Part shown: positions 32,461 through 41,495 of the stretch, piece by piece | Layout: every line of letters starts with the position of its first letter | How positions within the stretch are numbered: position 1 is the first letter of the stretch | Assembly (NCBI GenBank): GCA_965235115.1 | Contig: OZ249442.1 | Span: forward strand, 6,882,001 to 6,946,000 | Length of the DNA stretch: 64,000 bases | From: Laetmonice hystrix | Taxonomy: Eukaryota | Direction: 5' to 3' | Notes under the pieces: generated by a model | Database searches by the model: none | What the model was told of the DNA's origin: nothing | The model's input: the letters and a program-made list of their open reading frames with translations, nothing else | Made by a program: the position numbers and the translations under genes

Positions 32461-33401
32461 AGAATGTCCCAAGGAAGATTTGTCTACTGTAGCTGTCGGC
32501 GGATAGCTCTCGTGGATTGTATCTGACAGAGAGGAGGACGTTTCGGATGTGTGTGGTATAACGGAAACCAGCACGACGACGAACCCCCCACGTGGTTCCG
32601 GAATCAGGTAGGCCCAGTTCTCAGACTTACAGAATGAGTTTATAAACCAAGTGTTCCAACCCATCAGCCTTTTCTTATCTCCACCCCAGTTTCTCCAAAT
32701 GGAAGATGTTATTGGATGTTAAGTGTTACGTCATTAGCATCAAGTGTTTCTTGTTTTCTGCGTCTGGCTGCTCCAGAAATACCTTCACCTGCCGTGCCCA
32801 TGATACATGTAGTTCTTTCCTTCCGGTGATCGCTCTGTCCTAACCAGAAACAGTGCAGAGAATGCTGGGCCGTCAGGTCGTTCGGCTCTTTATCTGGTCT
32901 CAGTCTGATACTAGATCAGCACCAGAGATCATAGGATGAAGTGTAACAAGATACAACATCAAAATCTGGCTGGCATACTTCTCCCGGACACCTGGCCACA
33001 AAATTATAACGGTCTGAGGAACGTCTTCATGGCATGAGGCAAGGGGGCATGTGACTCCGTGTTTCCTGTGATCATAACCGAGGGAGAGGTTTTTTGGTAC
33101 CTCTCAGCTCCTTGTAATCATCCATTAGGTTGACCTGCTGAGCAGTCTGTTCTAGTTTATCATTTTCTTCCACCCCCATCTATTTTTTCTGGCCTTTATC
33201 TTGGGGTGTTTTTTATATTATTATTTAATAAAGGCGTGGCAGGCTATGAAGTGACATGAGTGAGGTTTGTCAGGCAGTCCATCTTGTTTAGCTGCTCCAG
33301 CACCCTTGTCATAACAAATTTATTGTGGAGAAATAGTTGAACCTAATACTGGAAACTCACTGCTACTGTGCCACAGTACTCAGGAACAGTCGGACCAGAC
33401 A

Positions 33402-33663
33402 CCCATTGGGGGCGTAGTTACAGGAGGCATTGGGGGCGTAGTTACAGGAGCCATTGGGGGCGTAGTTACAGGAGCCATTGGGGGCGTAGTTACAGGAGCC
33501 ACTGAGGGCGTAGTTACAGGAGCCATTGGGTGCGTAGTTACAGGAGCCATGGGGGGCGTAGTTACAGGAGCCATTGGGGGCGTAGTTACAGGAGCCATTG
33601 GGGGCGTAGTTACAGGAGCCATTGGGGGCGTAGTTACAAGAGCCATTGGGGGTGTAATTACAA
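33402..33663. repeat. 24-bp minisatellite, ~11 copies
   Basis: Unit CCATTGGGGGCGTAGTTACAGGAG. Confidence 0.95.
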
Positions 33664-34626
33664 AGTCTACGTTCACAGAAACTTGTACACATGTAGATTG
33701 GACCCCAGAAACAGTATGTCGGTTTTCTGATACATATTCAATATTGGACAAAATGCTGTAAAATTTATGGCATTGATACTGTATTGTTTTTTAACCCCAA
33801 GGACTGCGGTGTTTAACAGTAGGGGATTATATTGACCTGCAGCAGACAGATTCGTATAAAGTAATAAAACAAAGTACGTTTGATATTATCCCTATGGTGA
33901 ATCGCCTTAGAAATAGTTCGCCGTTACACGACCAGGGGGCGCTGTGAAGGGTTAACTGTAAGGTTATGGGAAGACGTGACAACCCGGATGCAGACAGTCA
34001 TTTATCTGGTCCGAGGCGGAGCGAGTCAGTGATGGGATTAACGGTGAGCCTGGCTGGTCAAGGGTGTGGTCATCCCCTGACCGCTGCCTGCACCAGGTGC
34101 CATCATTGGGCCAGCACCGGTTAAGTCGGACACTGCCCGGGGATCAGGTGCACCAAGCTCGAGATTTAGGAGGGACACTCAAACATTCTTCAGGGCAATG
34201 TTTCCAGTTGGCTATTGCATTCGGTTCTCTGTGCTTATCGAGGAAAATATTCAAGGAAATGTTGGGTATTTTGGCACGCTTTCTAGATGTATAGATTTGT
34301 CGATTCAATAAATAATGTGTATTGGGTGAAGATTGCGGTCGAACTCTCTGGGGCCGTCTTATTGGGTTCTGGAGGTTCTTTCAAGAGTTAAGACCCATAT
34401 ACCACCAGATATGTTACGTTAAACTCTACACGACAGGGAGGATTATGATATTTAATACTCATTAATCTCGATGGAAACCTGAGATATATGGTAATCCCAA
34501 CAGCCTGGGGAGAGTAGGAAGAATCAAGCGGTGTATAGAGTTTTATTACTTGTACCTGTCTATGGAAGAGTATGATTTCAACCAGCATACATTTTTTTTT
34601 TTTTTTTTTTTATTATGCATATTTTG

Positions 34627-34675
34627 ACAGGGGAACCCACTCGACTTGTCAGCCGCCATTAATGTAGGGCCCTGT
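34627..34675 (-). other. 3'-terminal stem-loop of the LINE RNA
   Basis: Sense ACAGGGCCCTACATTAATGGCGGCTGACAAGTCGAGTGGGTTCCCCTGT: ACAGGG/CCCTGT outer stem, CCCTAC/GTGGG inner stem, ~15 nt upstream of the tail. Confidence 0.6.
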
Positions 34676-34866
34676 GATACATTAACGTATTATACACTTT
34701 CACACATACATTCTACATTACCTTGTATGTACAGTATATAGTTTTACACATCCTTCTTAGCACTTAACAATTACATATAATATTTCTGCACTTACACATT
34801 CACTTTCGTATACAATTTAACCCATGCTTCTTAGAGCTTCTTACGAGATAAATCTATCTTTTCCCC

Positions 34867-37728
34867 CTAGTGTCTTTCATTCATGTACATATTATTATAA
34901 TATTTTTTAATCTCTACTTTAAATTCCTTCTTGTCCTTTAGGTTTCTCATGTAAACTGGTAGTTCGTTCCAAAGTGTAGGCCCAGTGTAGCTATTACATT
35001 TCTTAAAATGCTCACTCCTAGGTCTGGGTACTTCTAATAGAACTGCATCATGTGCTCTTGTAATGTTTGATTGAGCTATTCTGGAAGTGTTTTCAAGTAC
35101 CTCAAAGAAGGTAATCTTTTGCATCATAATTAGTCGTCTATATTTACATGGGAGTAACTTTGCTTCCTGGTGTAGCTGAAAAGTATTGAATAATCTATCC
35201 TTGTTCAATGCAATCTTTAACCCATTGTTTTGTATTACTTGCAGTTTGTGTTTATAATATTCAGTACACGTCCCGTTAAAAATGTTACCATATTCGAGAT
35301 ATGGTAGAATCATTGATTTGAATATAGTTAATGCAGTCGTTTTATTTACATATCGTCTTAATTTAGATAACATATATACCTTGTGTCCGGCTTTCTTGAT
35401 ACAATTTTTAATGTGATGATGGAATTGAAGTTTATTGTCGATTACTATCCCCAAATATGTAAATTTGTTAACAAATTCTAGATTATTGTTATTAATACTG
35501 ATATGGATATTTCTATCTTCGTCACTGCTTCTACCAAAAAGCATACATTTCGTTTTCTTTACATTAACTGTAAGTTTATTGTTTATAAACCAAGTATTCA
35601 GTTTATTAATGTCGTCAGTAATTTGTGTTACCAATTCTGGCAAACTAAAACTGTGTGCTACCATAGCTGTGTCATCGGCAAATGCACTTAAGTCTGATTT
35701 GATATCGGAGTCCAATATGTCATTGACATATAATAAGTAGATCAACGGGCCAAGAATTGTACCTTGCGGTATGCCGTAATTGATAACTTTACATTCTGAT
35801 TCAATTTCATTGTGTCTTACAAATTGCTGTCTATCTTTTAAGTATTCTATTATCCATGATTTGCTTTTATCTATTATACCCACATTTTCTAATTTAGTGG
35901 CTAGGATATCATGGTTGATACAATTAAATGCTTTTGCCAGATCCAGGAAAACTATAATGCTGTATTGGCCACTATTCTTATGTTCAAATATTTGGTTTAC
36001 AACTTTGTTGACCGCACCAGTTGTTGACTTTCCCTTCCTGAATCCATTTTGTGAAGATAAAAAGAGGTTATTGCTTTCCATATAGTTGTAGACAATTTTG
36101 TTTACGTGTTTTTCCAAGATCTTTGATGGCAGGGGAGTGTTAGAGATCGGTCTTAAGTTATTCAAATCCGTTGGATCTCCTTTTTTAGGTACTGGGGTAA
36201 CTCTAGCCACTTTAAATGCCGTAGGAATTTGGGAGTTTTCCAGCGAGTAGTTGTAGAGCCTAACAATGATGTCTGGTATTGCATTGAATGCATCGACTAG
36301 GACTCTCGTGCTAACTCTATTTAATCCCGATGACTTTGATAAAGAGATTTCATTCAAGATATTACAAAGACTGTCGACTGTGAATTTGCCAAGGTCTGCT
36401 AATACTGCATTGCTCTTCTGGACTGTAGGTCTGTTGATTGCCGAGGGATGTGGTAATCGGTCGGCTAGATCCTTTCCTATATTAATAAAATAGTCATTCA
36501 TCAGTTCCGTCGCCTCTTTATCTTTACACATGTTACCATTAACTGGATTACGTATTTCATCGATTTTAATATTTGACATCTCCGGTATTAAAGTTTTAAT
36601 ATCTTTCCAGAATTTCTTTTGGTCTTTTTCGTGTTCTTTTAATTTATTCAACATATAGTTTTGCTTAGCATCTCTGACTAGTTTATTGTAGGTTCTCCTT
36701 GCATGGCAGGCCCTATCATAGTTATATTGGGTTTTACTTCTACGGTAAATCCTAAATAAAATATCTCTTTGCAGCTCAAACTCTGTTAGTTCCCTATTTA
36801 ACCACTCGGGTCGTTGGCTTCCAACTTTAACCTTTCTATAGGGGCACATGCGGTCAATTTCAAACTCAATACCTTTGTAGATCATATCCCACATGTCATT
36901 TATATCTTCCAGTAGATCAAGGACTGTCCAATCTAAATTTTTTAATCTACTTTGGAATAGCTCCTTATTATAGTTGCTAAAACGTCTGCAATAAATAAAC
37001 TTCTTATCTCTAACGGTATGTTTCCTTTTTTTGATAATATATACAGGTAGGTGATCGCTAATATTGTAGTTTATGCATCCCGAGCTAAATATGTTCTTGA
37101 TATTGGTAATAACTACATCTATTAAGGTACTACCTTTAAGATGAATTCGGGTATCGTTTTCTATAATTTGTTTTAGTGTATAGTCATCTTCTAAGCCAGC
37201 AAGTAGTTTATACGAATCGGCTTTTTTATCCGAATAATCTAGGTTAAGATCTCCAATGATGACCACTTCACATTTATGTAAATCATTAATAGTGTTTATA
37301 CATTCTCTAATTGTTTCGATAGCTATTCCTGGGGTTCCCTTAGGTGGTCTATAGCAGTTTAATAGAATTATTTTCTTAGCATTATTACCCTTGATAATAA
37401 GGACTTGCAGTTCTATGTGACAATTCGAAATTTGGGTTACTACCTGGAAATTTATATCTTCTTTAACATAAGTGCAAGTACCCCCTCCCCTTTTGTTAAC
37501 TCTATCATTACGAATTATCTGGTATCCTTTAATCTGTACCATTGATGATGGTAATTCAGGTGACAACCATGTTTCACTCAGGCACAGAATGTTCACGTAT
37601 GGGGTAAAGTTATGTACAATGCTATCGAGTTTAGGTAGTAAACTTCTGACGTTGAGATGCATAATTTTAAATCCCTTCATCATTGAGAGCTCTTCCGCTG
37701 ATATGTTTACTTGTTCATTAGTACACAT
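34867..37728 (-). CDS. LINE ORF2: apurinic-type endonuclease + reverse transcriptase, 953 aa, uninterrupted
   Basis: APE motifs HLNVRSL, LSETWL, RNDR..GGG, YRPP, GDLN, LID, SDHLP. RT motifs NLRPIS..SKILEK, QNGFR..KST, FLDLAKAF, GIPQGTILGP, FADDT, KTKCM, YLGIVID. CR1/L2-type tail LEYG, KLQVIQN, GPTLWNELP. Confidence 0.97.
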   Translation of the reverse strand: MCTNEQVNISAEELSMMKGFKIMHLNVRSLLPKLDSIVHNFTPYVNILCLSETWLSPELPSSMVQIKGYQIIRNDRVNKRGGGTCTYVKEDINFQVVTQISNCHIELQVLIIKGNNAKKIILLNCYRPPKGTPGIAIETIRECINTINDLHKCEVVIIGDLNLDYSDKKADSYKLLAGLEDDYTLKQIIENDTRIHLKGSTLIDVVITNIKNIFSSGCINYNISDHLPVYIIKKRKHTVRDKKFIYCRRFSNYNKELFQSRLKNLDWTVLDLLEDINDMWDMIYKGIEFEIDRMCPYRKVKVGSQRPEWLNRELTEFELQRDILFRIYRRSKTQYNYDRACHARRTYNKLVRDAKQNYMLNKLKEHEKDQKKFWKDIKTLIPEMSNIKIDEIRNPVNGNMCKDKEATELMNDYFINIGKDLADRLPHPSAINRPTVQKSNAVLADLGKFTVDSLCNILNEISLSKSSGLNRVSTRVLVDAFNAIPDIIVRLYNYSLENSQIPTAFKVARVTPVPKKGDPTDLNNLRPISNTPLPSKILEKHVNKIVYNYMESNNLFLSSQNGFRKGKSTTGAVNKVVNQIFEHKNSGQYSIIVFLDLAKAFNCINHDILATKLENVGIIDKSKSWIIEYLKDRQQFVRHNEIESECKVINYGIPQGTILGPLIYLLYVNDILDSDIKSDLSAFADDTAMVAHSFSLPELVTQITDDINKLNTWFINNKLTVNVKKTKCMLFGRSSDEDRNIHISINNNNLEFVNKFTYLGIVIDNKLQFHHHIKNCIKKAGHKVYMLSKLRRYVNKTTALTIFKSMILPYLEYGNIFNGTCTEYYKHKLQVIQNNGLKIALNKDRLFNTFQLHQEAKLLPCKYRRLIMMQKITFFEVLENTSRIAQSNITRAHDAVLLEVPRPRSEHFKKCNSYTGPTLWNELPVYMRNLKDKKEFKVEIKKYYNNMYMNERH

Positions 37729-38047
37729 TGGTAAGATACGTGAGATATTTTATACAGTCGAGTCTTCATATACGGGTAGTTCGTTTTGTCAATTTCTTCA
37801 TCTAGGGTTTTACGAATCTTAGTTTGAGAACGCAATGAGGTATACATAGTCATGGGTGAAAGTCTTTCACTGGGTGCATACAAGGTACAAATACAGCACA
37901 TATATACATATATACAGTCAATTCCGGTATCGTCAGTAGGTGAAGGCATATGTTTTCTACAGTCACCAATGACCACGTATGTCCACGGGCAGATACAATG
38001 AGCTGTAACTGTGATGTTGTTACTGTGACATGGTGTCTTTGCTTAGA

Positions 38048-38313
38048 GCACCCCGCTGCCCATATTCCCCAGCGGGAGCTATATGCACACGGGGTACAAA
38101 GGCATCTTACCACAAGATAGGTAGCACTGAGATATTTAAATCAGATGTGTATCTTAGTATAAGCATAGATGTAGGGTATAAGGCACCCCGCTGCCCATAT
38201 TCCCCATCGGGAGCTATAGGCACACGGTGTACAAGATATCCTACAGTAATATAATCCTATGTATATGTGATAAAAAAAATACTTTCGTGCCCATATTCCC
38301 CAACGGGAGCTAT
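38048..38313 (-). promoter_or_regulatory. Three copies of a conserved 26-35-nt motif in the inter-ORF spacer (putative RNA stem-loops)
   Basis: Plus-strand TGCCCATATTCCCCA(G/T/A)CGGGAGCTAT in copies at 38048-38082, 38183-38217, 38288-38313. The repeat is directly visible; function is inferred. Confidence 0.5.
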
Positions 38314-38365
38314 GGGTTTGGTTGACTGACATCCTACCGTAAATCCGAGGATGGCGTGAGTCCTA

Positions 38366-38981
38366 TTAGCGGGGGTGGAGAGTAATGTTCGTTTTGGCGG
38401 CTTTTGCTATGAGGGCGGACCACAGTTTTTGAGTTGCCGTATTTGGATGTAGACCATCATAAAATCAATTGTATTTATTTATCCTGCGTCCGTTGGTTAG
38501 GCTATGTATTGTGTCCATGGTCCATTACGACTTGATTGAGGGTTATAACTCCATCGTTTATGACTGCCTGAGCAGTATCAAAATCTGTTATGTGACCACG
38601 GTACGTGTTGTATACATTAATGTCCAGCCCGGTGGGTTGGCAGATTATAACACATTTGGAGTAACGTTGTAGATATGTTTTCGCCCAGGTAAAGTAATCT
38701 GTTAACACATCTACCATATTTGGTATTTCGGTAAAAGTTGGAGTGATTTTACCAGTTGGCGATTTAGAAGTTAGGTTGTTCACACCGGCCATTAGATATA
38801 TAAAATCGAATGATCCTGACTTCAAATAATGGTCCGCTGCTTTGACTGCTGTAGTAATGGTGGCACCAGGTGTGGTGGAAACTGTGAAGTTAGTCGGGAT
38901 ATTGCGGTTGGCACATTCCAGGTTTATAAAATATTCAAGTCCTCTGCCTCGTGAGTCACATATGAGTAAGGAGGGTGTCAT
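38366..38981 (-). pseudogene. SGNH/GDSL esterase ORF of the LINE, disrupted by a frameshift and an in-frame TGA
   Basis: ATG at 38981. Block I LLICDSRG, block II TTPGAT, block III AGVNNL in the listed frame (stop 38502-38504). The C-terminus continues in the +1 frame as WTMDTIHSLTNGRRINKYN*FYDGLHPNTATQKLWSALIAKAAKTNITLHPR* (TGA 38465-38467, block V DGLHP 38444-38458, stop 38366-38368). Confidence 0.8.
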
Positions 38982-38982
38982 C

Positions 38983-40275
38983 TTACAGATCCTGTCTAAC
39001 CTTTTGGAGTAAATCTCCAAACTTGTTTTGGCCTGGACAGTTGGAGTCAATGCGGGAGGCTTGCATTAGGGTGAGACCACATCCATAGAAGGGGTCGCGG
39101 GTTGCTTCGTACAGTGAGCAGTTCCCGGTGGCCTTGAGTTTCTCCAACAGGCTGGTGTTCTGTTCAAATTTAGCCTTGACAATAGTTTCCAACTTTTCAA
39201 GTTTCTTTGTTGTCCATGCGTCAGTGGTCTTAATTCTTCTTGCAATTTTGTGGGCTTCAAACGGGTCCGTAGTGGCTAGTATAGACTCCGCTAGTACTTG
39301 TTCACCATGTTCCACGGCCTTCTGATGGCAGAATGCTTGCTCAGCACTGTTATATGTGACACCCTTGAGTTCAATATTACATGGGTACATGTTAGACATG
39401 TAGGACTCCTGACCTTGGAAGGCGATACCACTCTGTATATGTAGGGTTTTCGCTTCAGTGAGGGAAAGATTGTGTGGGAGGTATTGGAGGTCAATTTGAG
39501 TGTATCGCCTGCCGTCAATCACAAGGGCCTCTCCTTTCAGTTTGGCATTCAGGTGTTTAATTTTAGCCAGGTTGTATATGTGTTGCATTACATGCCGCCT
39601 TGATTGAGCTTTGGGTGAGAGGTCATCAACAATAGAGATCCTTGCCCAGCGTTGGTGGTCCTTAAGCCTCTTGACCTTGCTGTATACGTCACTCTTTGAG
39701 GTGGTGCGGCTAAGTTGTATTAGAATAGGTCGGGGGTTGGTTCTATTTTTGTTCCTGTCCCCCAGTCTGTAGACAGCACAACAATCAGCTATTGTAGTTT
39801 CAGTGCCCAGATCAGTTAGTAAGTCGCTTACTATTACTTTCACATTTTCTCCATTTCTTTCTGGGATCCCATGTATGATTAAGTTAAACTTGCGTTTGTC
39901 ATTCTCTATCTTCTCTAGTCTACTCTCCAGGGTATCAATACGCTCCACCAGTTGAGAGTTTTCAGCTCCGACGCGCACTATTTGTTTGTTTAATTCTTTG
40001 ATAGTTTCCTCTTGTTCATCTACTTTGGCTTTTATCTCCTTCATTTCTTTAACACTTTCAGAGACTTCGTTCAGCTGTGCACTCATCTGATTCACATTGT
40101 TATTTGTTGTCATCATTAGTACATAGAGGTCTCGTAGGGTCGGCGTATCGTCTGTATCTGACTGGAGGGGTCTAATTGTTGGCGCCTCTCCCGGTAACTC
40201 GCTCACCTCTTTGTCCGTGTTCATATCTATTGTAGGATTCCTGTTTGTAGCCTTGGATCTTGTCCTTTGTGACAT
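38983..40275 (-). CDS. LINE ORF1 (coiled coil + L1-type RRM/CTD) fused to a C-terminal NADAR (YbiA/DUF1768) domain, 430 aa from the first ATG
   Basis: First ATG at 40275 (MSQRTRSK; the track's start at 40344 is GTG). Heptad-rich segment (LNEVSESV...LEKIEND), RRM motifs RKFNLIIHGIPE, YRLG, PRPILIQL, ISIVDDLS. NADAR at 38986-39426: F....YMSNMYP, GVTYNSAEQAF..QKA, AKFEQN..L..KLKATG, LYEATRDPFYGCG, GQNKFGDLLQKVR. Confidence 0.92.
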   Translation of the reverse strand: MSQRTRSKATNRNPTIDMNTDKEVSELPGEAPTIRPLQSDTDDTPTLRDLYVLMMTTNNNVNQMSAQLNEVSESVKEMKEIKAKVDEQEETIKELNKQIVRVGAENSQLVERIDTLESRLEKIENDKRKFNLIIHGIPERNGENVKVIVSDLLTDLGTETTIADCCAVYRLGDRNKNRTNPRPILIQLSRTTSKSDVYSKVKRLKDHQRWARISIVDDLSPKAQSRRHVMQHIYNLAKIKHLNAKLKGEALVIDGRRYTQIDLQYLPHNLSLTEAKTLHIQSGIAFQGQESYMSNMYPCNIELKGVTYNSAEQAFCHQKAVEHGEQVLAESILATTDPFEAHKIARRIKTTDAWTTKKLEKLETIVKAKFEQNTSLLEKLKATGNCSLYEATRDPFYGCGLTLMQASRIDSNCPGQNKFGDLLQKVRQDL

Positions 40276-40796
40276 TTGGATTGTTCTTGGTTCGCACAGC
40301 TTACAGGTTGTCTTGTTGTGGTTCTGGATCTCGTTAAATCTCACAGTAATGTCCCGGTTAGCTAGTTAAAAGTGATTTTCCTGAGAGCCCGCGGTCGACA
40401 CGTCTGGTCACTCTGACGCCATATTTGATTTGAACACTGCAGGGAGGACTGAGAGAAGTTCAGTATGGTTCTCTTGTTGTCCGAAACCTACATCATTTAC
40501 ACGATCTTTATCTATTCATTCTCACCGTATTAGTTCCGAGGCAATGATTGCAGTCAATAGGGGGCTCAGGTCCCATCTTGGTGCCGATGAAAGTAATCGT
40601 TTCGGGTCTGATTGCCTCTCTCCCTTGTAGCAGGCCTTCAGTCAGATATTGTATTCAAGTGAAAGCAGTGTTCAATGCCAGTGTGTTTAAAATAGAACGA
40701 ATCACAAGAGAGAATCAACCGGGGCAGGGGTCACCTAGACTATTTTGGAGATAGTTTACAGATATGCCATCTCGACGTTTAAGCGAGTAAACTAAA

Positions 40797-41111
40797 AATA
40801 GAACTGTCGAGGAGGGCTGATTGTGAATGTTAAGGTAATAGAACTGTCGAGGAGGGCTGATTGTGAATGTTAAGGTAATAGAACTGTCGAGGAGGGCTGA
40901 TTGTGAATGTTAAGGTAATAGAACTGGTGAGGAGGGCTGATTGTGAATGTTAAGGTAATAGAACTGTCGAGGAGGGCTGGTTGTGAATGTTAAGGTAATA
41001 GAACTGTCGAGGAGAGCTGATTGTGAATGTTAAGGTAATAGAACTGTCGAGGAGGGCTGATTGTGAATGTTAAGGTAATAGAACTGTCGGGGAGGGCTGA
41101 TTGTGAATGTT
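40797..41111. repeat. 40-bp minisatellite, ~8 copies
   Basis: Unit TAATAGAACTGTCGAGGAGGGCTGATTGTGAATGTTAAGG. Confidence 0.95.
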
Positions 41112-41278
41112 TTTGTACGATCGGTTGATTCTAGCTCCTGTATACCCGAGGATTTGAGGATTTTTACCTTGACTTTCTCGGGGTTGGTGAGTGGGAATGA
41201 TATTGGGTGATTCCCCGGAAACTTGGATCACCTCTAGTCTTGAAATAGACCTTCTAATTTGACGTCATATATACATCA

Positions 41279-41495
41279 AGGCCGTCCGGGGCGGGGTGGT
41301 GGTGGTCCGGGGTGTCTGTACCTCCCGCCCCCCCCCCCATCCAAAATCAAGTATAGGGCTTGAAATGGATCACTTTTGACATGTAATTTCAGTCCTTATT
41401 TTGTGCTCTAAGATGTGGCCCCCGGACGTCCCCCCTAGCATGGCTTCCCCCGGCCCAGGTGTACCCCCCTCCGTCAGAAAATCGTGCGCACGGCC
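41279..41495. mobile_element. Possible degenerate GC-rich MITE
   Basis: GGCCGTCCG at left vs CGCACGGCC at right, poly-C tracts near both ends; layout resembles the 2991 element. TIR match is only ~6-9 bp. Confidence 0.3.

What the first reader, a model, noticed from the sequence alone, without database searches (positions are those of the whole stretch)
38366..40275. Tricistronic LINE layout with TAA-G-ATG stop-start coupling of a stand-alone esterase
Seen: the ORF1-NADAR stop (38985-38983) is followed after one G by the esterase ATG (38981). Established: SGNH esterases occur in CR1/L2/RTE-type elements, normally fused within ORF1, and closely coupled stop-start codons support termination-reinitiation. 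Inference: this element has three cistrons and two different accessory enzymes (NADAR and esterase), which departs from the standard two-ORF LINE plan.
Basis: partly seen in the sequence, partly recalled or inferred. Interest (0 to 1): 0.7.

Follow-up and report, generated by a model that had tools for sequence, protein, structure and literature searches.

The report
Three-gene jumping element with two enzymes
This is a young copy of a large family of animal jumping genes (LINEs) with three genes instead of two: an RNA-coating protein ending in a NADAR enzyme, a separate small esterase-like gene starting one base after the first gene's stop, and the copying enzyme; in this copy the esterase gene is broken.

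Summary
On the minus strand, ORF1 (40275-38983) ends TAA, then one G, then the ATG of a second ORF (38981).

- **ORF1** is an L1-type coiled-coil/RRM/CTD protein ending in a NADAR domain.
- **The second ORF** is a stand-alone SGNH-fold hydrolase from a very large family of ~215-aa proteins.
- **ORF2** (37728-34867) is APE+RT.
- **Layout:** the same order, NADAR-ORF1, separate esterase ORF, long spacer, ORF2, recurs in seven fetched lineages. Three more partial or decayed loci show NADAR-ORF1 followed by the esterase. Protein identity between lineages is 25-45%, so this is not a nested insertion.
- **This copy is damaged:** its esterase has a 35-nt deletion and a premature TGA. The abundant version in the same sample's reads lacks both and keeps TAAGATG.
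- **Junction:** the exact sequence is not conserved. Gaps are 1, 1, 1, 2, 7, 11, 13, 56, 131 and 185 nt. They are ATG-poor (1 against 5.7 expected), and every esterase ATG has A at -3. This fits reinitiation after ORF1 termination but does not prove it. No RNA data exist.
- **ORF2 expression:** the ATG-rich spacer means ORF2 cannot be reached by scanning, so one tricistronic mRNA is unproven.

The scan met this family before on other DNA of this genome (s1-337654, s1-337653). Verdict: new variant of a known kind, moderate interest.

The parts
38983..40275 (-). ORF1, 430 aa, intact: coiled coil (about aa 57-130), L1-type RRM+CTD (about aa 134-250), NADAR domain (aa 289-430, nt about 39411-38986), stop TAA 38985-38983
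   Evidence: NADAR E 3.9e-26; 8bau NADAR 4e-24; human LINE-1 ORF1p 2yko 1.6e-9 with the 7-sequence profile
38979..38985 (-). Stop-start junction TAA-G-ATG; the esterase frame is +1 relative to ORF1; A at -3 of the ATG
   Evidence: identical in the high-depth contigs of the same sample; same heptamer in L002, TAAAATG in L004
38366..38981 (-). Stand-alone SGNH-type esterase gene, broken in this copy. The open part 38981-38502 (159 aa) has the DSRG and GVNN motifs. A 35-nt deletion at about 38525 shifts the frame. TGA at 38467-38465. The C-terminal part with DGLHP is in another frame and ends TAA 38368-38366
   Evidence: alignment with intact relatives; abundant version has 34 extra letters at 38525 and a sense codon at 38467
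37729..38365 (-). 637-nt spacer between esterase and ORF2. It holds 16 ATGs and three copies of a strand-specific motif gctCCCGNTGGGGaatatgggca (plus-strand coordinates 38057-38085, 38192-38220, 38288-38316)
34867..37728 (-). ORF2, 953 aa, intact: APE endonuclease and reverse transcriptase
   Evidence: RVT_1 5e-29, Exo_endo_phos_2 1.1e-5; 31-35% identity over about 900-940 aa to ORF2 of L001, L002, L008
34592..34866 (-). 3' UTR with an AATAAA signal, ending in a run of 20 A (34611-34592): the 3' end of the element
   Evidence: read directly

Best explanation
The stretch is a recently inserted copy, about 99.6% identical over ORF1 and the esterase to the abundant version in the same sample. It belongs to a poly(A)-ended APE-type LINE family with three protein-coding ORFs on one strand. 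ORF1p is an L1-type coiled-coil/RRM/CTD RNA-binding protein with a C-terminal NADAR domain. The second ORF is a separate polypeptide of about 215 aa with an SGNH-hydrolase fold. ORF2p is APE+RT. Shown: the domain calls, the separate frames, the conservation of this order in many diverged lineages, purifying selection on the esterase, and that this copy's esterase is broken by a 35-nt deletion and a nonsense codon while the family version is open. Inferred: the esterase is translated from the full-length element RNA by ribosomes that terminate at the ORF1 stop and restart at the next AUG, with only short-range scanning of an AUG-free gap. This resembles stop-start coupling in the SART1 LINE. 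Also inferred: ORF2, which lies behind a long AUG-rich spacer carrying a repeated CCC-N-TGGGG motif, is expressed by another route, either internal entry or an internal promoter. The role of the esterase is probably binding or lipid-related and does not always need catalysis, because one lineage (L002/L004) has lost the nucleophile Ser and the His yet keeps the ORF under constraint.
For: Architecture: ORF1 domains; SGNH motifs DSRG/GVNN/DGxH, AlphaFold pLDDT 97.8, all top PDB fold hits are GDSL/SGNH esterases. Searches show the same three-ORF order in L001-L004, L008, L010/L011 and L012; all three ORFs diverge together; 986 esterase clusters at E<=0.001 and 400 at E<=1e-10; among the best 150, most are 200-235 aa and begin at the domain. 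Selection: (WIN/L006 dN 0.15, dS 1.1; L002/L004 dN 0.18 with dS saturated). Family version in this genome: (junction identical, esterase frame open). Reinitiation. Gaps are 1, 1, 1, 2, 7, 11, 13, 56, 131 and 185 nt. There is 1 ATG in 408 nt of gap against 5.7 expected (P 0.016), and that single ATG opens an 8-codon mini-ORF ending before the esterase ATG. A at -3 in 10 of 10. The frame offset is +1 in some lineages and +2 in others, which rules out one programmed frameshift. LINE precedent for coupled stop-start: SART1 UAAUG, as reviewed in PMC3894237. ORF2 by another route: 14-28 ATGs per spacer, not depleted; motif arrays.
Against: No RNA or ribosome data: no RNA runs hold the stretch. Reinitiation after a 430-codon ORF is normally inefficient (general knowledge, also stated in PMC3894237). 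No conserved UGGGA/TURBS-like motif lies within 120 nt upstream. No unusual RNA structure follows the junction (z -0.6 to +1.3). Three lineages have gaps of 56-185 nt, so tight coupling is not required family-wide. One decayed copy (L007) has ORF1 and the esterase in one frame without a stop. The ATG-depletion test rests on only 408 nt.
Confidence: 0.5

Rival explanations
1. The three-ORF architecture is real, but the esterase is translated from its own transcript (an internal promoter inside ORF1, or splicing) or by internal ribosome entry, not by restart after ORF1 termination. On this reading the short gaps merely reflect compaction.
For: Gaps of 56-185 nt in L009, L008 and L010 work without tight coupling. 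No TURBS-like motif and no downstream structure. ORF2 must in any case use a route that does not depend on scanning.
Against: With gaps of 1-13 nt in seven lineages, any promoter or entry site would have to lie inside the conserved NADAR coding sequence. The gaps are ATG-poor (P 0.016), which only matters if ribosomes scan them.
Confidence: 0.3
2. ORF1 and the esterase are made as one fusion protein, by frameshifting or readthrough, or because the true family sequence is fused. The separate ORFs would then be an artefact of this copy.
For: One decayed copy (L007/P0026) has NADAR and esterase in one frame without a stop. The esterase frame is open for 7-33 codons upstream of its ATG.
Against: The abundant version in this genome keeps TAA-G-ATG. 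Ten lineages have a stop, nearly always TAA. The esterase frame is +1 in some and +2 in others. A conserved ATG with A at -3 sits just before the DSRG motif in all of them. Most of the best 150 esterase hits are stand-alone proteins of about 215 aa.
Confidence: 0.05
3. In this element's lineage the esterase is dispensable and decaying, so the copy is in effect a two-ORF LINE carrying a dead passenger.
For: In this copy ORF1 (1.3 kb) and ORF2 (2.9 kb) are intact, and both disabling lesions fall in the 0.6-kb esterase. A related NADAR LINE (L005) has no esterase at all.
Against: The abundant version lacks both lesions. The esterase of this lineage is under purifying selection against L006 (dN/dS about 0.14). 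Two lesions in one copy are too few for a statistical claim.
Confidence: 0.08
4. Chance juxtaposition or nested insertion: the NADAR-ORF1/esterase block and the APE-RT ORF2 come from different elements.
For: The spacer between the esterase and ORF2 is long (637 nt) and contains repeats.
Against: The same order recurs in L001-L004, L008, L010/L011 and L012, with all three ORFs diverging together. Read depth rises smoothly from 5' to 3', as for a single LINE family.
Confidence: 0.02

Closest known systems
Esterase-type (Type IV) ORF1 LINEs of the CR1, L2 and RTEX clades, e.g. zebrafish ZfL2-1 (PMC3905857, PMC4120745)
   Same: An APE-type LINE that encodes an SGNH-fold hydrolase upstream of ORF2. 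The catalytic S, N and D-x-x-H motifs are present in most family members.
   Different: In those elements the esterase is the ORF1 protein (coiled coil plus esterase) and no RRM is present. PMC3905857 states that no esterase ORF1p in Repbase has an RRM and suggests the two may be mutually exclusive. Here an L1-type RRM ORF1p and the esterase coexist in one element as two separate polypeptides. Sequence kinship to the ZfL2-1 esterase is only marginal (4c1b, E 0.085).
NADAR-bearing ORF1 proteins of oyster LINEs filed as Tx1 in Repbase (one paragraph in PMC12477816)
   Same: A LINE ORF1 protein with a YbiA-family NADAR domain, in a marine invertebrate.
   Different: That paper mentions only the NADAR domain. 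It describes no esterase ORF and no three-ORF layout. I could not confirm a Tx1/L1-clade placement for this ORF2: the solved human L1 ORF2p is not among its sequence hits, whereas R2 proteins are.
Stop-start coupled translation in the SART1 LINE (UAAUG) and in RNA viruses (calicivirus TURBS, hypovirus UAAUG; PMC3894237, PMC2699510)
   Same: A downstream ORF whose AUG lies at or next to the stop of a long upstream ORF, in a retroelement or RNA genome.
   Different: Here the codons are adjacent (UAA-G-AUG) rather than overlapping, and the downstream ORF is an accessory enzyme, not ORF2. The spacing varies from 1 to 185 nt between lineages. Neither the 18S-complementary motif nor a downstream structure was found. 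No experiment exists.
Stand-alone GDSL esterase ORF3 of bdelloid LTR retrotransposons and Athena Penelope-like elements (PMC5408684)
   Same: A GDSL/SGNH hydrolase encoded as an extra, separate ORF of a retroelement.
   Different: A different class of element (LTR and PLE, not LINE), a different position (after pol), and independent captures according to that paper.

Membership tests
APE-type non-LTR (LINE) retrotransposon | ORF2 with an APE endonuclease followed by a reverse transcriptase | tested here: met
   Pfam RVT_1 E 5e-29, Exo_endo_phos_2 1.1e-5, Exo_endo_phos 0.004 on the 953-aa ORF
APE-type non-LTR (LINE) retrotransposon | Multi-copy family with 5'-truncated copies and an A-rich 3' end; target-site duplication | tested here: inconclusive
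   Depth of same-sample contigs rises from about 425 (ORF1) to 860-2800 (ORF2). A20 tail at 34611-34592. No TSD was found and the 5' end is not defined.
L1-type (Type II) ORF1p | Coiled coil followed by the L1 RRM and CTD | tested here: met
   The ORF1 profile hits human LINE-1 ORF1p 2yko/2ykp at E 1.6e-9 (profile positions 95-257 against chain 9-178) and mouse 2ldy at 1.8e-4. Coiled-coil-type Pfam hits at aa 57-130.
NADAR (PF08719, YbiA family) | Match above Pfam's gathering score over the whole domain | tested here: met
   92.7 bits against 35.1, profile positions 9-162 of 163; PDB 8bau E 4e-24 and YbiA 2b3w 6.7e-16 with the profile. Catalytic residues were not examined.
SGNH/GDSL hydrolase superfamily | SGNH fold with Ser (block I), Asn (block III) and Asp-x-x-His (block V) | tested here: met
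   AlphaFold model of the closest intact relative, P0008, has pLDDT 97.8. The top 50 Foldseek PDB hits are nearly all annotated GDSL/SGNH-type esterases, E down to 3e-7. DSR in 69 of 84 members and DGxH in nearly all. Pfam GDSL hits stay below the cut-off (best E 0.002). In the window copy only blocks I and III are in frame. L002/L004 lack the Ser and the His.
Esterase-type (Type IV) ORF1 LINEs (CR1/L2/RTEX) | The esterase is part of the ORF1 protein, after a coiled coil, with no RRM | tested here: not met
   The esterase is a separate ORF in another frame in ten lineages. ORF1 carries an L1-type RRM.
Termination-reinitiation (stop-start coupled) translation | Start codon overlapping or next to the upstream stop | tested here: met
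   UAA-G-AUG in the window, L002 and L004; 2-13 nt in four more lineages
Termination-reinitiation (stop-start coupled) translation | Upstream 18S-complementary motif (TURBS UGGGA) or a downstream enhancing structure (SART1) | tested here: not met
   UGGGA within 120 nt upstream in only 1 of 7 loci. Fold z-scores from -0.6 to +1.3 for 120 nt at the junction in 6 loci.
Termination-reinitiation (stop-start coupled) translation | Downstream translation depends on upstream termination | not testable with these tools
   Needs reporters or Ribo-seq; no RNA runs are available.
Tx1 clade (Repbase label for oyster NADAR LINEs, PMC12477816) | The RT groups with the L1/Tx1 clade | tested here: inconclusive
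   No reference RT set was on hand. phmmer of ORF2 against PDB finds R2 proteins (3.7e-9) but not human L1 ORF2p at E<=0.01. ORF2 is 953 aa with no Pfam-detected domain beyond APE and RT.

The most novel reading that the evidence does not exclude
This large invertebrate LINE family is a natural three-cistron eukaryotic mRNA that uses two different non-canonical routes. The first is a signal-free restart after a 430-codon ORF, which makes a free SGNH protein. The second is internal recruitment of ribosomes, or an internal promoter, through an array of conserved CCC-N-TGGGG motifs, which makes ORF2p. The coexistence of an RRM ORF1p, a NADAR enzyme and an esterase, sometimes catalytically dead, would then show that the LINE esterase is a separable accessory module and not an alternative to the RNA-binding ORF1p.
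Probability: 0.25. Interest if true: 0.65.

Novelty: new variant of a known kind. Interest (0 to 1): 0.5.

Why it matters
LINEs are usually described as one- or two-ORF elements. The esterase has been treated as one of several mutually exclusive ORF1 types: PMC3905857 notes that no esterase ORF1p carries an RRM. This family is large, with about a thousand esterase clusters at 50% identity, and is spread over several marine and invertebrate samples. In it an L1-type RRM protein, a NADAR enzyme (a family now known to remove ADP-ribose from nucleic-acid bases) and a free SGNH protein are kept together under selection. That gives three things:

- a natural system for asking what the LINE esterase does, including a lineage where it seems to work without its catalytic residues;
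- a candidate case of translational restart after a long ORF in animals;
- an open problem of how ORF2 is expressed behind an AUG-rich spacer that carries a conserved repeated motif.

None of this changes the basic picture of LINE biology, and the stop-start detail itself is variable.

Tried and rejected
- **Other copies in the window:** none; the junction 32-mer occurs once.
- **Pfam on the window's truncated esterase:** no hit. Intact relatives give only sub-threshold GDSL hits, so the fold was settled by structure.
- **RNA evidence:** The look-up of sequencing runs returned only four runs of one sample, none recorded as RNA, so one-transcript and expression claims could not be tested.
- **Frameshift or readthrough fusion:** rejected because the frame offset differs between lineages and a conserved ATG starts each esterase.
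- **Leaky scanning:** rejected because ORF1 holds many in-frame and out-of-frame ATGs (read directly).
- **TURBS-like UGGGA upstream:** absent in 6 of 7 loci.
- **Downstream RNA structure as in SART1:** no signal.
- **Rfam on 34300-41400:** no match at E<=1.
- **TSD search with the 15 nt after the poly(A):** only chance-level matches.
- **RT clade placement:** the ORF2 word search gave no informative names, so the clade stays open.
- **Esterase tree to map gap lengths:** only two pairs are resolved, (window, L006) and (L002, L004). The ancestral gap cannot be inferred, beyond noting that the window's 1-nt gap is not shared with its closest relative.
- **P0157 context:** no DNA was returned.
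- **ESM Atlas features for the esterase:** only unnamed or GDSL clusters.
Full report
**1. What is in the sequence**

The element lies on the minus strand. Read in its own direction it has these parts:
- ORF1 from ATG 40275 to TAA 38985-38983 (430 aa).
- One G (38982).
- ATG 38981 opening a second ORF.
- A 637-nt non-coding spacer (38365-37729).
- ORF2 from 37728 to 34867 (953 aa).
- A 3' UTR with AATAAA and a run of 20 A ending at 34592.

**2. Domain calls**

ORF1 matches Pfam NADAR at 92.7 bits (cut-off 35.1) over residues 289-430, with coiled-coil-type matches at residues 57-130. Alone it hits the solved NADAR protein 8bau (3.5e-12) and human LINE-1 ORF1p (0.004). A profile of seven ORF1 sequences from related loci raises these to 4e-24 (8bau), 6.7e-16 (YbiA 2b3w) and 1.6e-9 (LINE-1 ORF1p 2yko, RRM plus CTD). 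ORF1p is therefore an L1-type coiled-coil/RRM/CTD protein with NADAR added at the C-terminus.

ORF2 has APE and RT.

The second ORF gave no Pfam hit in the window copy, and intact relatives give only sub-threshold GDSL hits. Other evidence settles the call:
- The family carries DSRG near the N-terminus, GVNN/GVND in the middle and DG(L/I/C)H near the C-terminus.
- A family profile finds GDSL proteins in the PDB (7ddy 9e-4, 3p94 8e-3) and, marginally, the ZfL2-1 LINE esterase 4c1b (0.085).
- An AlphaFold model of the closest intact relative (P0008, 84-sequence alignment) has pLDDT 97.8.
- The top 50 Foldseek PDB matches are nearly all annotated GDSL/SGNH-type esterases, with E down to 3e-7.

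The 'esterase' label is sound at the level of fold and motifs. Activity is untested.

**3. This copy is damaged; the family is not**

Alignment with intact relatives shows that the window's second ORF stops early (TAG 38504-38502). Its C-terminal part, including DGLHP, lies in another frame and ends at TAA 38368-38366. A TGA sits at 38467-38465.

I laid Logan contigs of four runs from one sample on 34800-40400. Single contigs of depth 295-570 cover 38272-40400 and differ from the window at only seven or eight bases. They carry 34 extra letters at 38525, or 35 nt counting the base shared by both flanks. That restores a reading that matches L006 residue for residue. They also read T for A at 38467, which makes the window's TGA a sense codon.

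So the abundant version has an open esterase, and the two lesions are private to this copy. The same contigs show no difference at 38979-38985, so TAAGATG is the family's state in this genome. Depth rises from about 425 over ORF1 to 860-2800 over ORF2, the usual sign of 5'-truncated LINE copies.

**4. The three-ORF layout is old and conserved**

A word search with ORF1 found six proteins. Their contigs, plus contigs found through esterase hits, were fetched. Intact or nearly intact elements with NADAR-ORF1, a separate esterase ORF of 214-222 aa, a spacer of 330-1350 nt and an APE-RT ORF2 occur in L001, L002, L003, L004, L008, L010/L011 and L012. These come from three samples.

L006 is a decayed close relative of the window copy. 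L009 is a short plankton contig with the NADAR end followed by the esterase.

Pairwise identities are 23-42% for ORF1, 25-44% for the esterase and 26-44% for ORF2. The pair L002/L004 is close in both ORF1 (79%) and the esterase (73%). The three ORFs have therefore travelled together for a long time, which rules out a chance juxtaposition or nested insertion.

An exhaustive profile search with the esterase found 986 clusters (50% identity) at E<=0.001 and 400 at E<=1e-10. Among the best 150, most are 200-235 aa and match from about residue 3-6 to the end, so they are stand-alone proteins.

The esterase is under purifying selection: window against L006 gives dN 0.15 and dS 1.1, and L002 against L004 gives dN 0.18 with dS saturated.

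Two exceptions were seen:
- L005 is a NADAR-ORF1 LINE with no trace of an esterase.
- L007 is a decayed copy in which NADAR and the esterase are in one frame with no stop.

**5. The junction across lineages**

| Locus | ORF1 stop | Gap to esterase ATG (nt) |
|---|---|---|
| Window | TAA | 1 (G) |
| L002 | TAA | 1 (G) |
| L004 | TAA | 1 (A) |
| L003 | TAA | 2 |
| L012 | TAA | 7 |
| L006 | TAA | 11 |
| L001 | TAA | 13 |
| L009 | TGA | 56 |
| L008 | TAA | 131 |
| L010/L011 | TAA | 185 |

- The esterase frame is +1 relative to ORF1 in some lineages and +2 in others, so a single programmed frameshift is excluded.
- The window's closest relative has an 11-nt gap, and the esterase tree resolves only the pairs (window, L006) and (L002, L004). 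The exact heptamer is therefore not a conserved signal.
- What recurs is a short or AUG-free gap: 1 ATG in 408 nt against 5.7 expected from shuffles (P 0.016). That one ATG opens an 8-codon mini-ORF that ends before the esterase ATG.
- All ten esterase ATGs have A at -3.

This pattern is expected if post-termination ribosomes resume scanning and start at the next AUG. The SART1 LINE gives a precedent for coupled stop-start translation (Kojima et al. 2005, as reviewed in PMC3894237).

Several points count against a specialised signal:
- UGGGA occurs within 120 nt upstream in only one of seven loci.
- The 120 nt around the junction fold no better than shuffles in six loci.
- Restart after a long ORF is normally inefficient.

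I rate the restart mechanism as the most likely route (about 0.5). An internal promoter, splicing or an IRES is the main rival (about 0.3).

**6. ORF2 is a separate problem**

The esterase-to-ORF2 spacers are 574-1350 nt (330 nt in L012) and hold 14-28 ATGs (7 in L012). That is at or above expectation, so scanning from the esterase stop cannot reach ORF2.

In five lineages the spacer carries several copies of a short motif on the sense strand, within otherwise unconserved AT-rich sequence:

| Locus | Motif | Copies |
|---|---|---|
| Window | CCCG(T/A/C)TGGGGAAT | 3 |
| L003 | CCCG(T/A/C)TGGGG | 8 |
| L002 | AGCCCATGGGGCC | 4 |
| L004 | CCCATGGGG (four as AGCCCATGGGGC) | 5 |
| L001 | CTCGTTGGGGA | 2 |

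There are no matches on the opposite strand of the spacers, and 0-2 in about 4.8 kb of coding sequence per element. The last motif lies 280-360 nt upstream of the ORF2 ATG in four lineages.

Its role is unknown. It could be an internal promoter, an entry site for ribosomes, or a protein-binding array. Either way, 'tricistronic' in the sense of one mRNA translated three times is not established.

**7. Comparison with what is known**

- LINE esterases are described as the ORF1 protein itself (coiled coil plus esterase) in the CR1, L2 and RTEX clades (PMC3905857, PMC4120745, PMC13343379).
- PMC3905857 states that no esterase-containing ORF1p in Repbase has an RRM, and that the combination may never have occurred or may be mutually exclusive.
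- Stand-alone GDSL ORFs are known in bdelloid LTR elements and Athena PLEs (PMC5408684), not in LINEs as far as my searches reached.
- NADAR in LINE ORF1 has one brief mention, for oyster elements filed as Tx1 (PMC12477816). I could not confirm a Tx1 placement here.
- NADAR enzymes are now known to reverse ADP-ribosylation of bases (PMC11543638 and PMC12945103, titles and abstracts seen). I did not examine the catalytic residues here.

**8. Earlier notes of this scan**

Two earlier notes on other DNA of the same genome describe the same family (s1-337654, s1-337653). I treated them as leads only. My own searches and loci reproduce the three-ORF layout and the single literature mention.

**9. 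Verdict**

- The three-ORF, two-enzyme architecture is real and widespread.
- The specific TAA-G-ATG coupling is lineage-specific, and the restart mechanism is plausible but unproven.
- This copy's esterase is dead.
- Classification: new variant of a known kind (LINE). Interest 0.5.

Noticed in passing
window 38057-38085, 38192-38220, 38288-38316 (motif on the minus strand); L002:9238-9560, L003:9054-9645, L004:8534-8775, L001:9985-10266: The esterase-to-ORF2 spacer carries 2-8 sense-strand copies of a short GC motif (CCC-N1-3-TGGGG) in unconserved AT-rich sequence, in five lineages with 30-45% protein identity. There are none on the other strand and almost none in coding sequence. The last copy lies 280-360 nt before the ORF2 ATG. 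It may be an internal promoter, a ribosome entry site or a protein-binding array.
   Followed up: partly
L002:8376-9035 and L004:7851-8510 (also P0010, P0011, P0056, P0057): In this esterase sub-lineage the nucleophile Ser of DSRG is Asp or Glu (CEDRA, CDDRG) and the His of DGLH is Asn (DGLN). The ORF nevertheless stays open and constrained (73% identity, dN 0.18 with saturated dS). This looks like a pseudo-enzyme with a non-catalytic role.
   Followed up: partly
L005:508-5272: A more distant NADAR-ORF1 LINE (559-aa ORF1) has no esterase remnant in the 1.4 kb before ORF2. That region holds an Arg/Gly-rich low-complexity ORF instead. So the NADAR and esterase modules are not always linked.
   Followed up: partly
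L007:6001-7245: A decayed, 5'-truncated copy in which the NADAR end of ORF1 runs in frame into the esterase without a stop (protein P0026, 414 aa). Whether any active lineage is fused is unknown.
   Followed up: partly
window 40717-41191 and 33355-33714: Tandem repeats flank the element: about 9-10 units of 40 nt upstream of ORF1 (possibly the 5' UTR or a promoter array, or just flanking satellite) and about 11-15 units of 24 nt downstream of the poly(A).
   Followed up: no
L006:2958-3644 (opposite strand): A 228-aa OTU-domain ORF (PF02338) lies just after the decayed esterase of L006. It is probably part of another inserted element.
   Followed up: no
L008:7558-10425 and L012:6982-9843: The precomputed Pfam lists give a weak PF28493 (fs1K10_C) hit in ORF2 of two related elements. 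Some more distant RT relatives carry PHD (PF00628) fused to ORF2.
   Followed up: no
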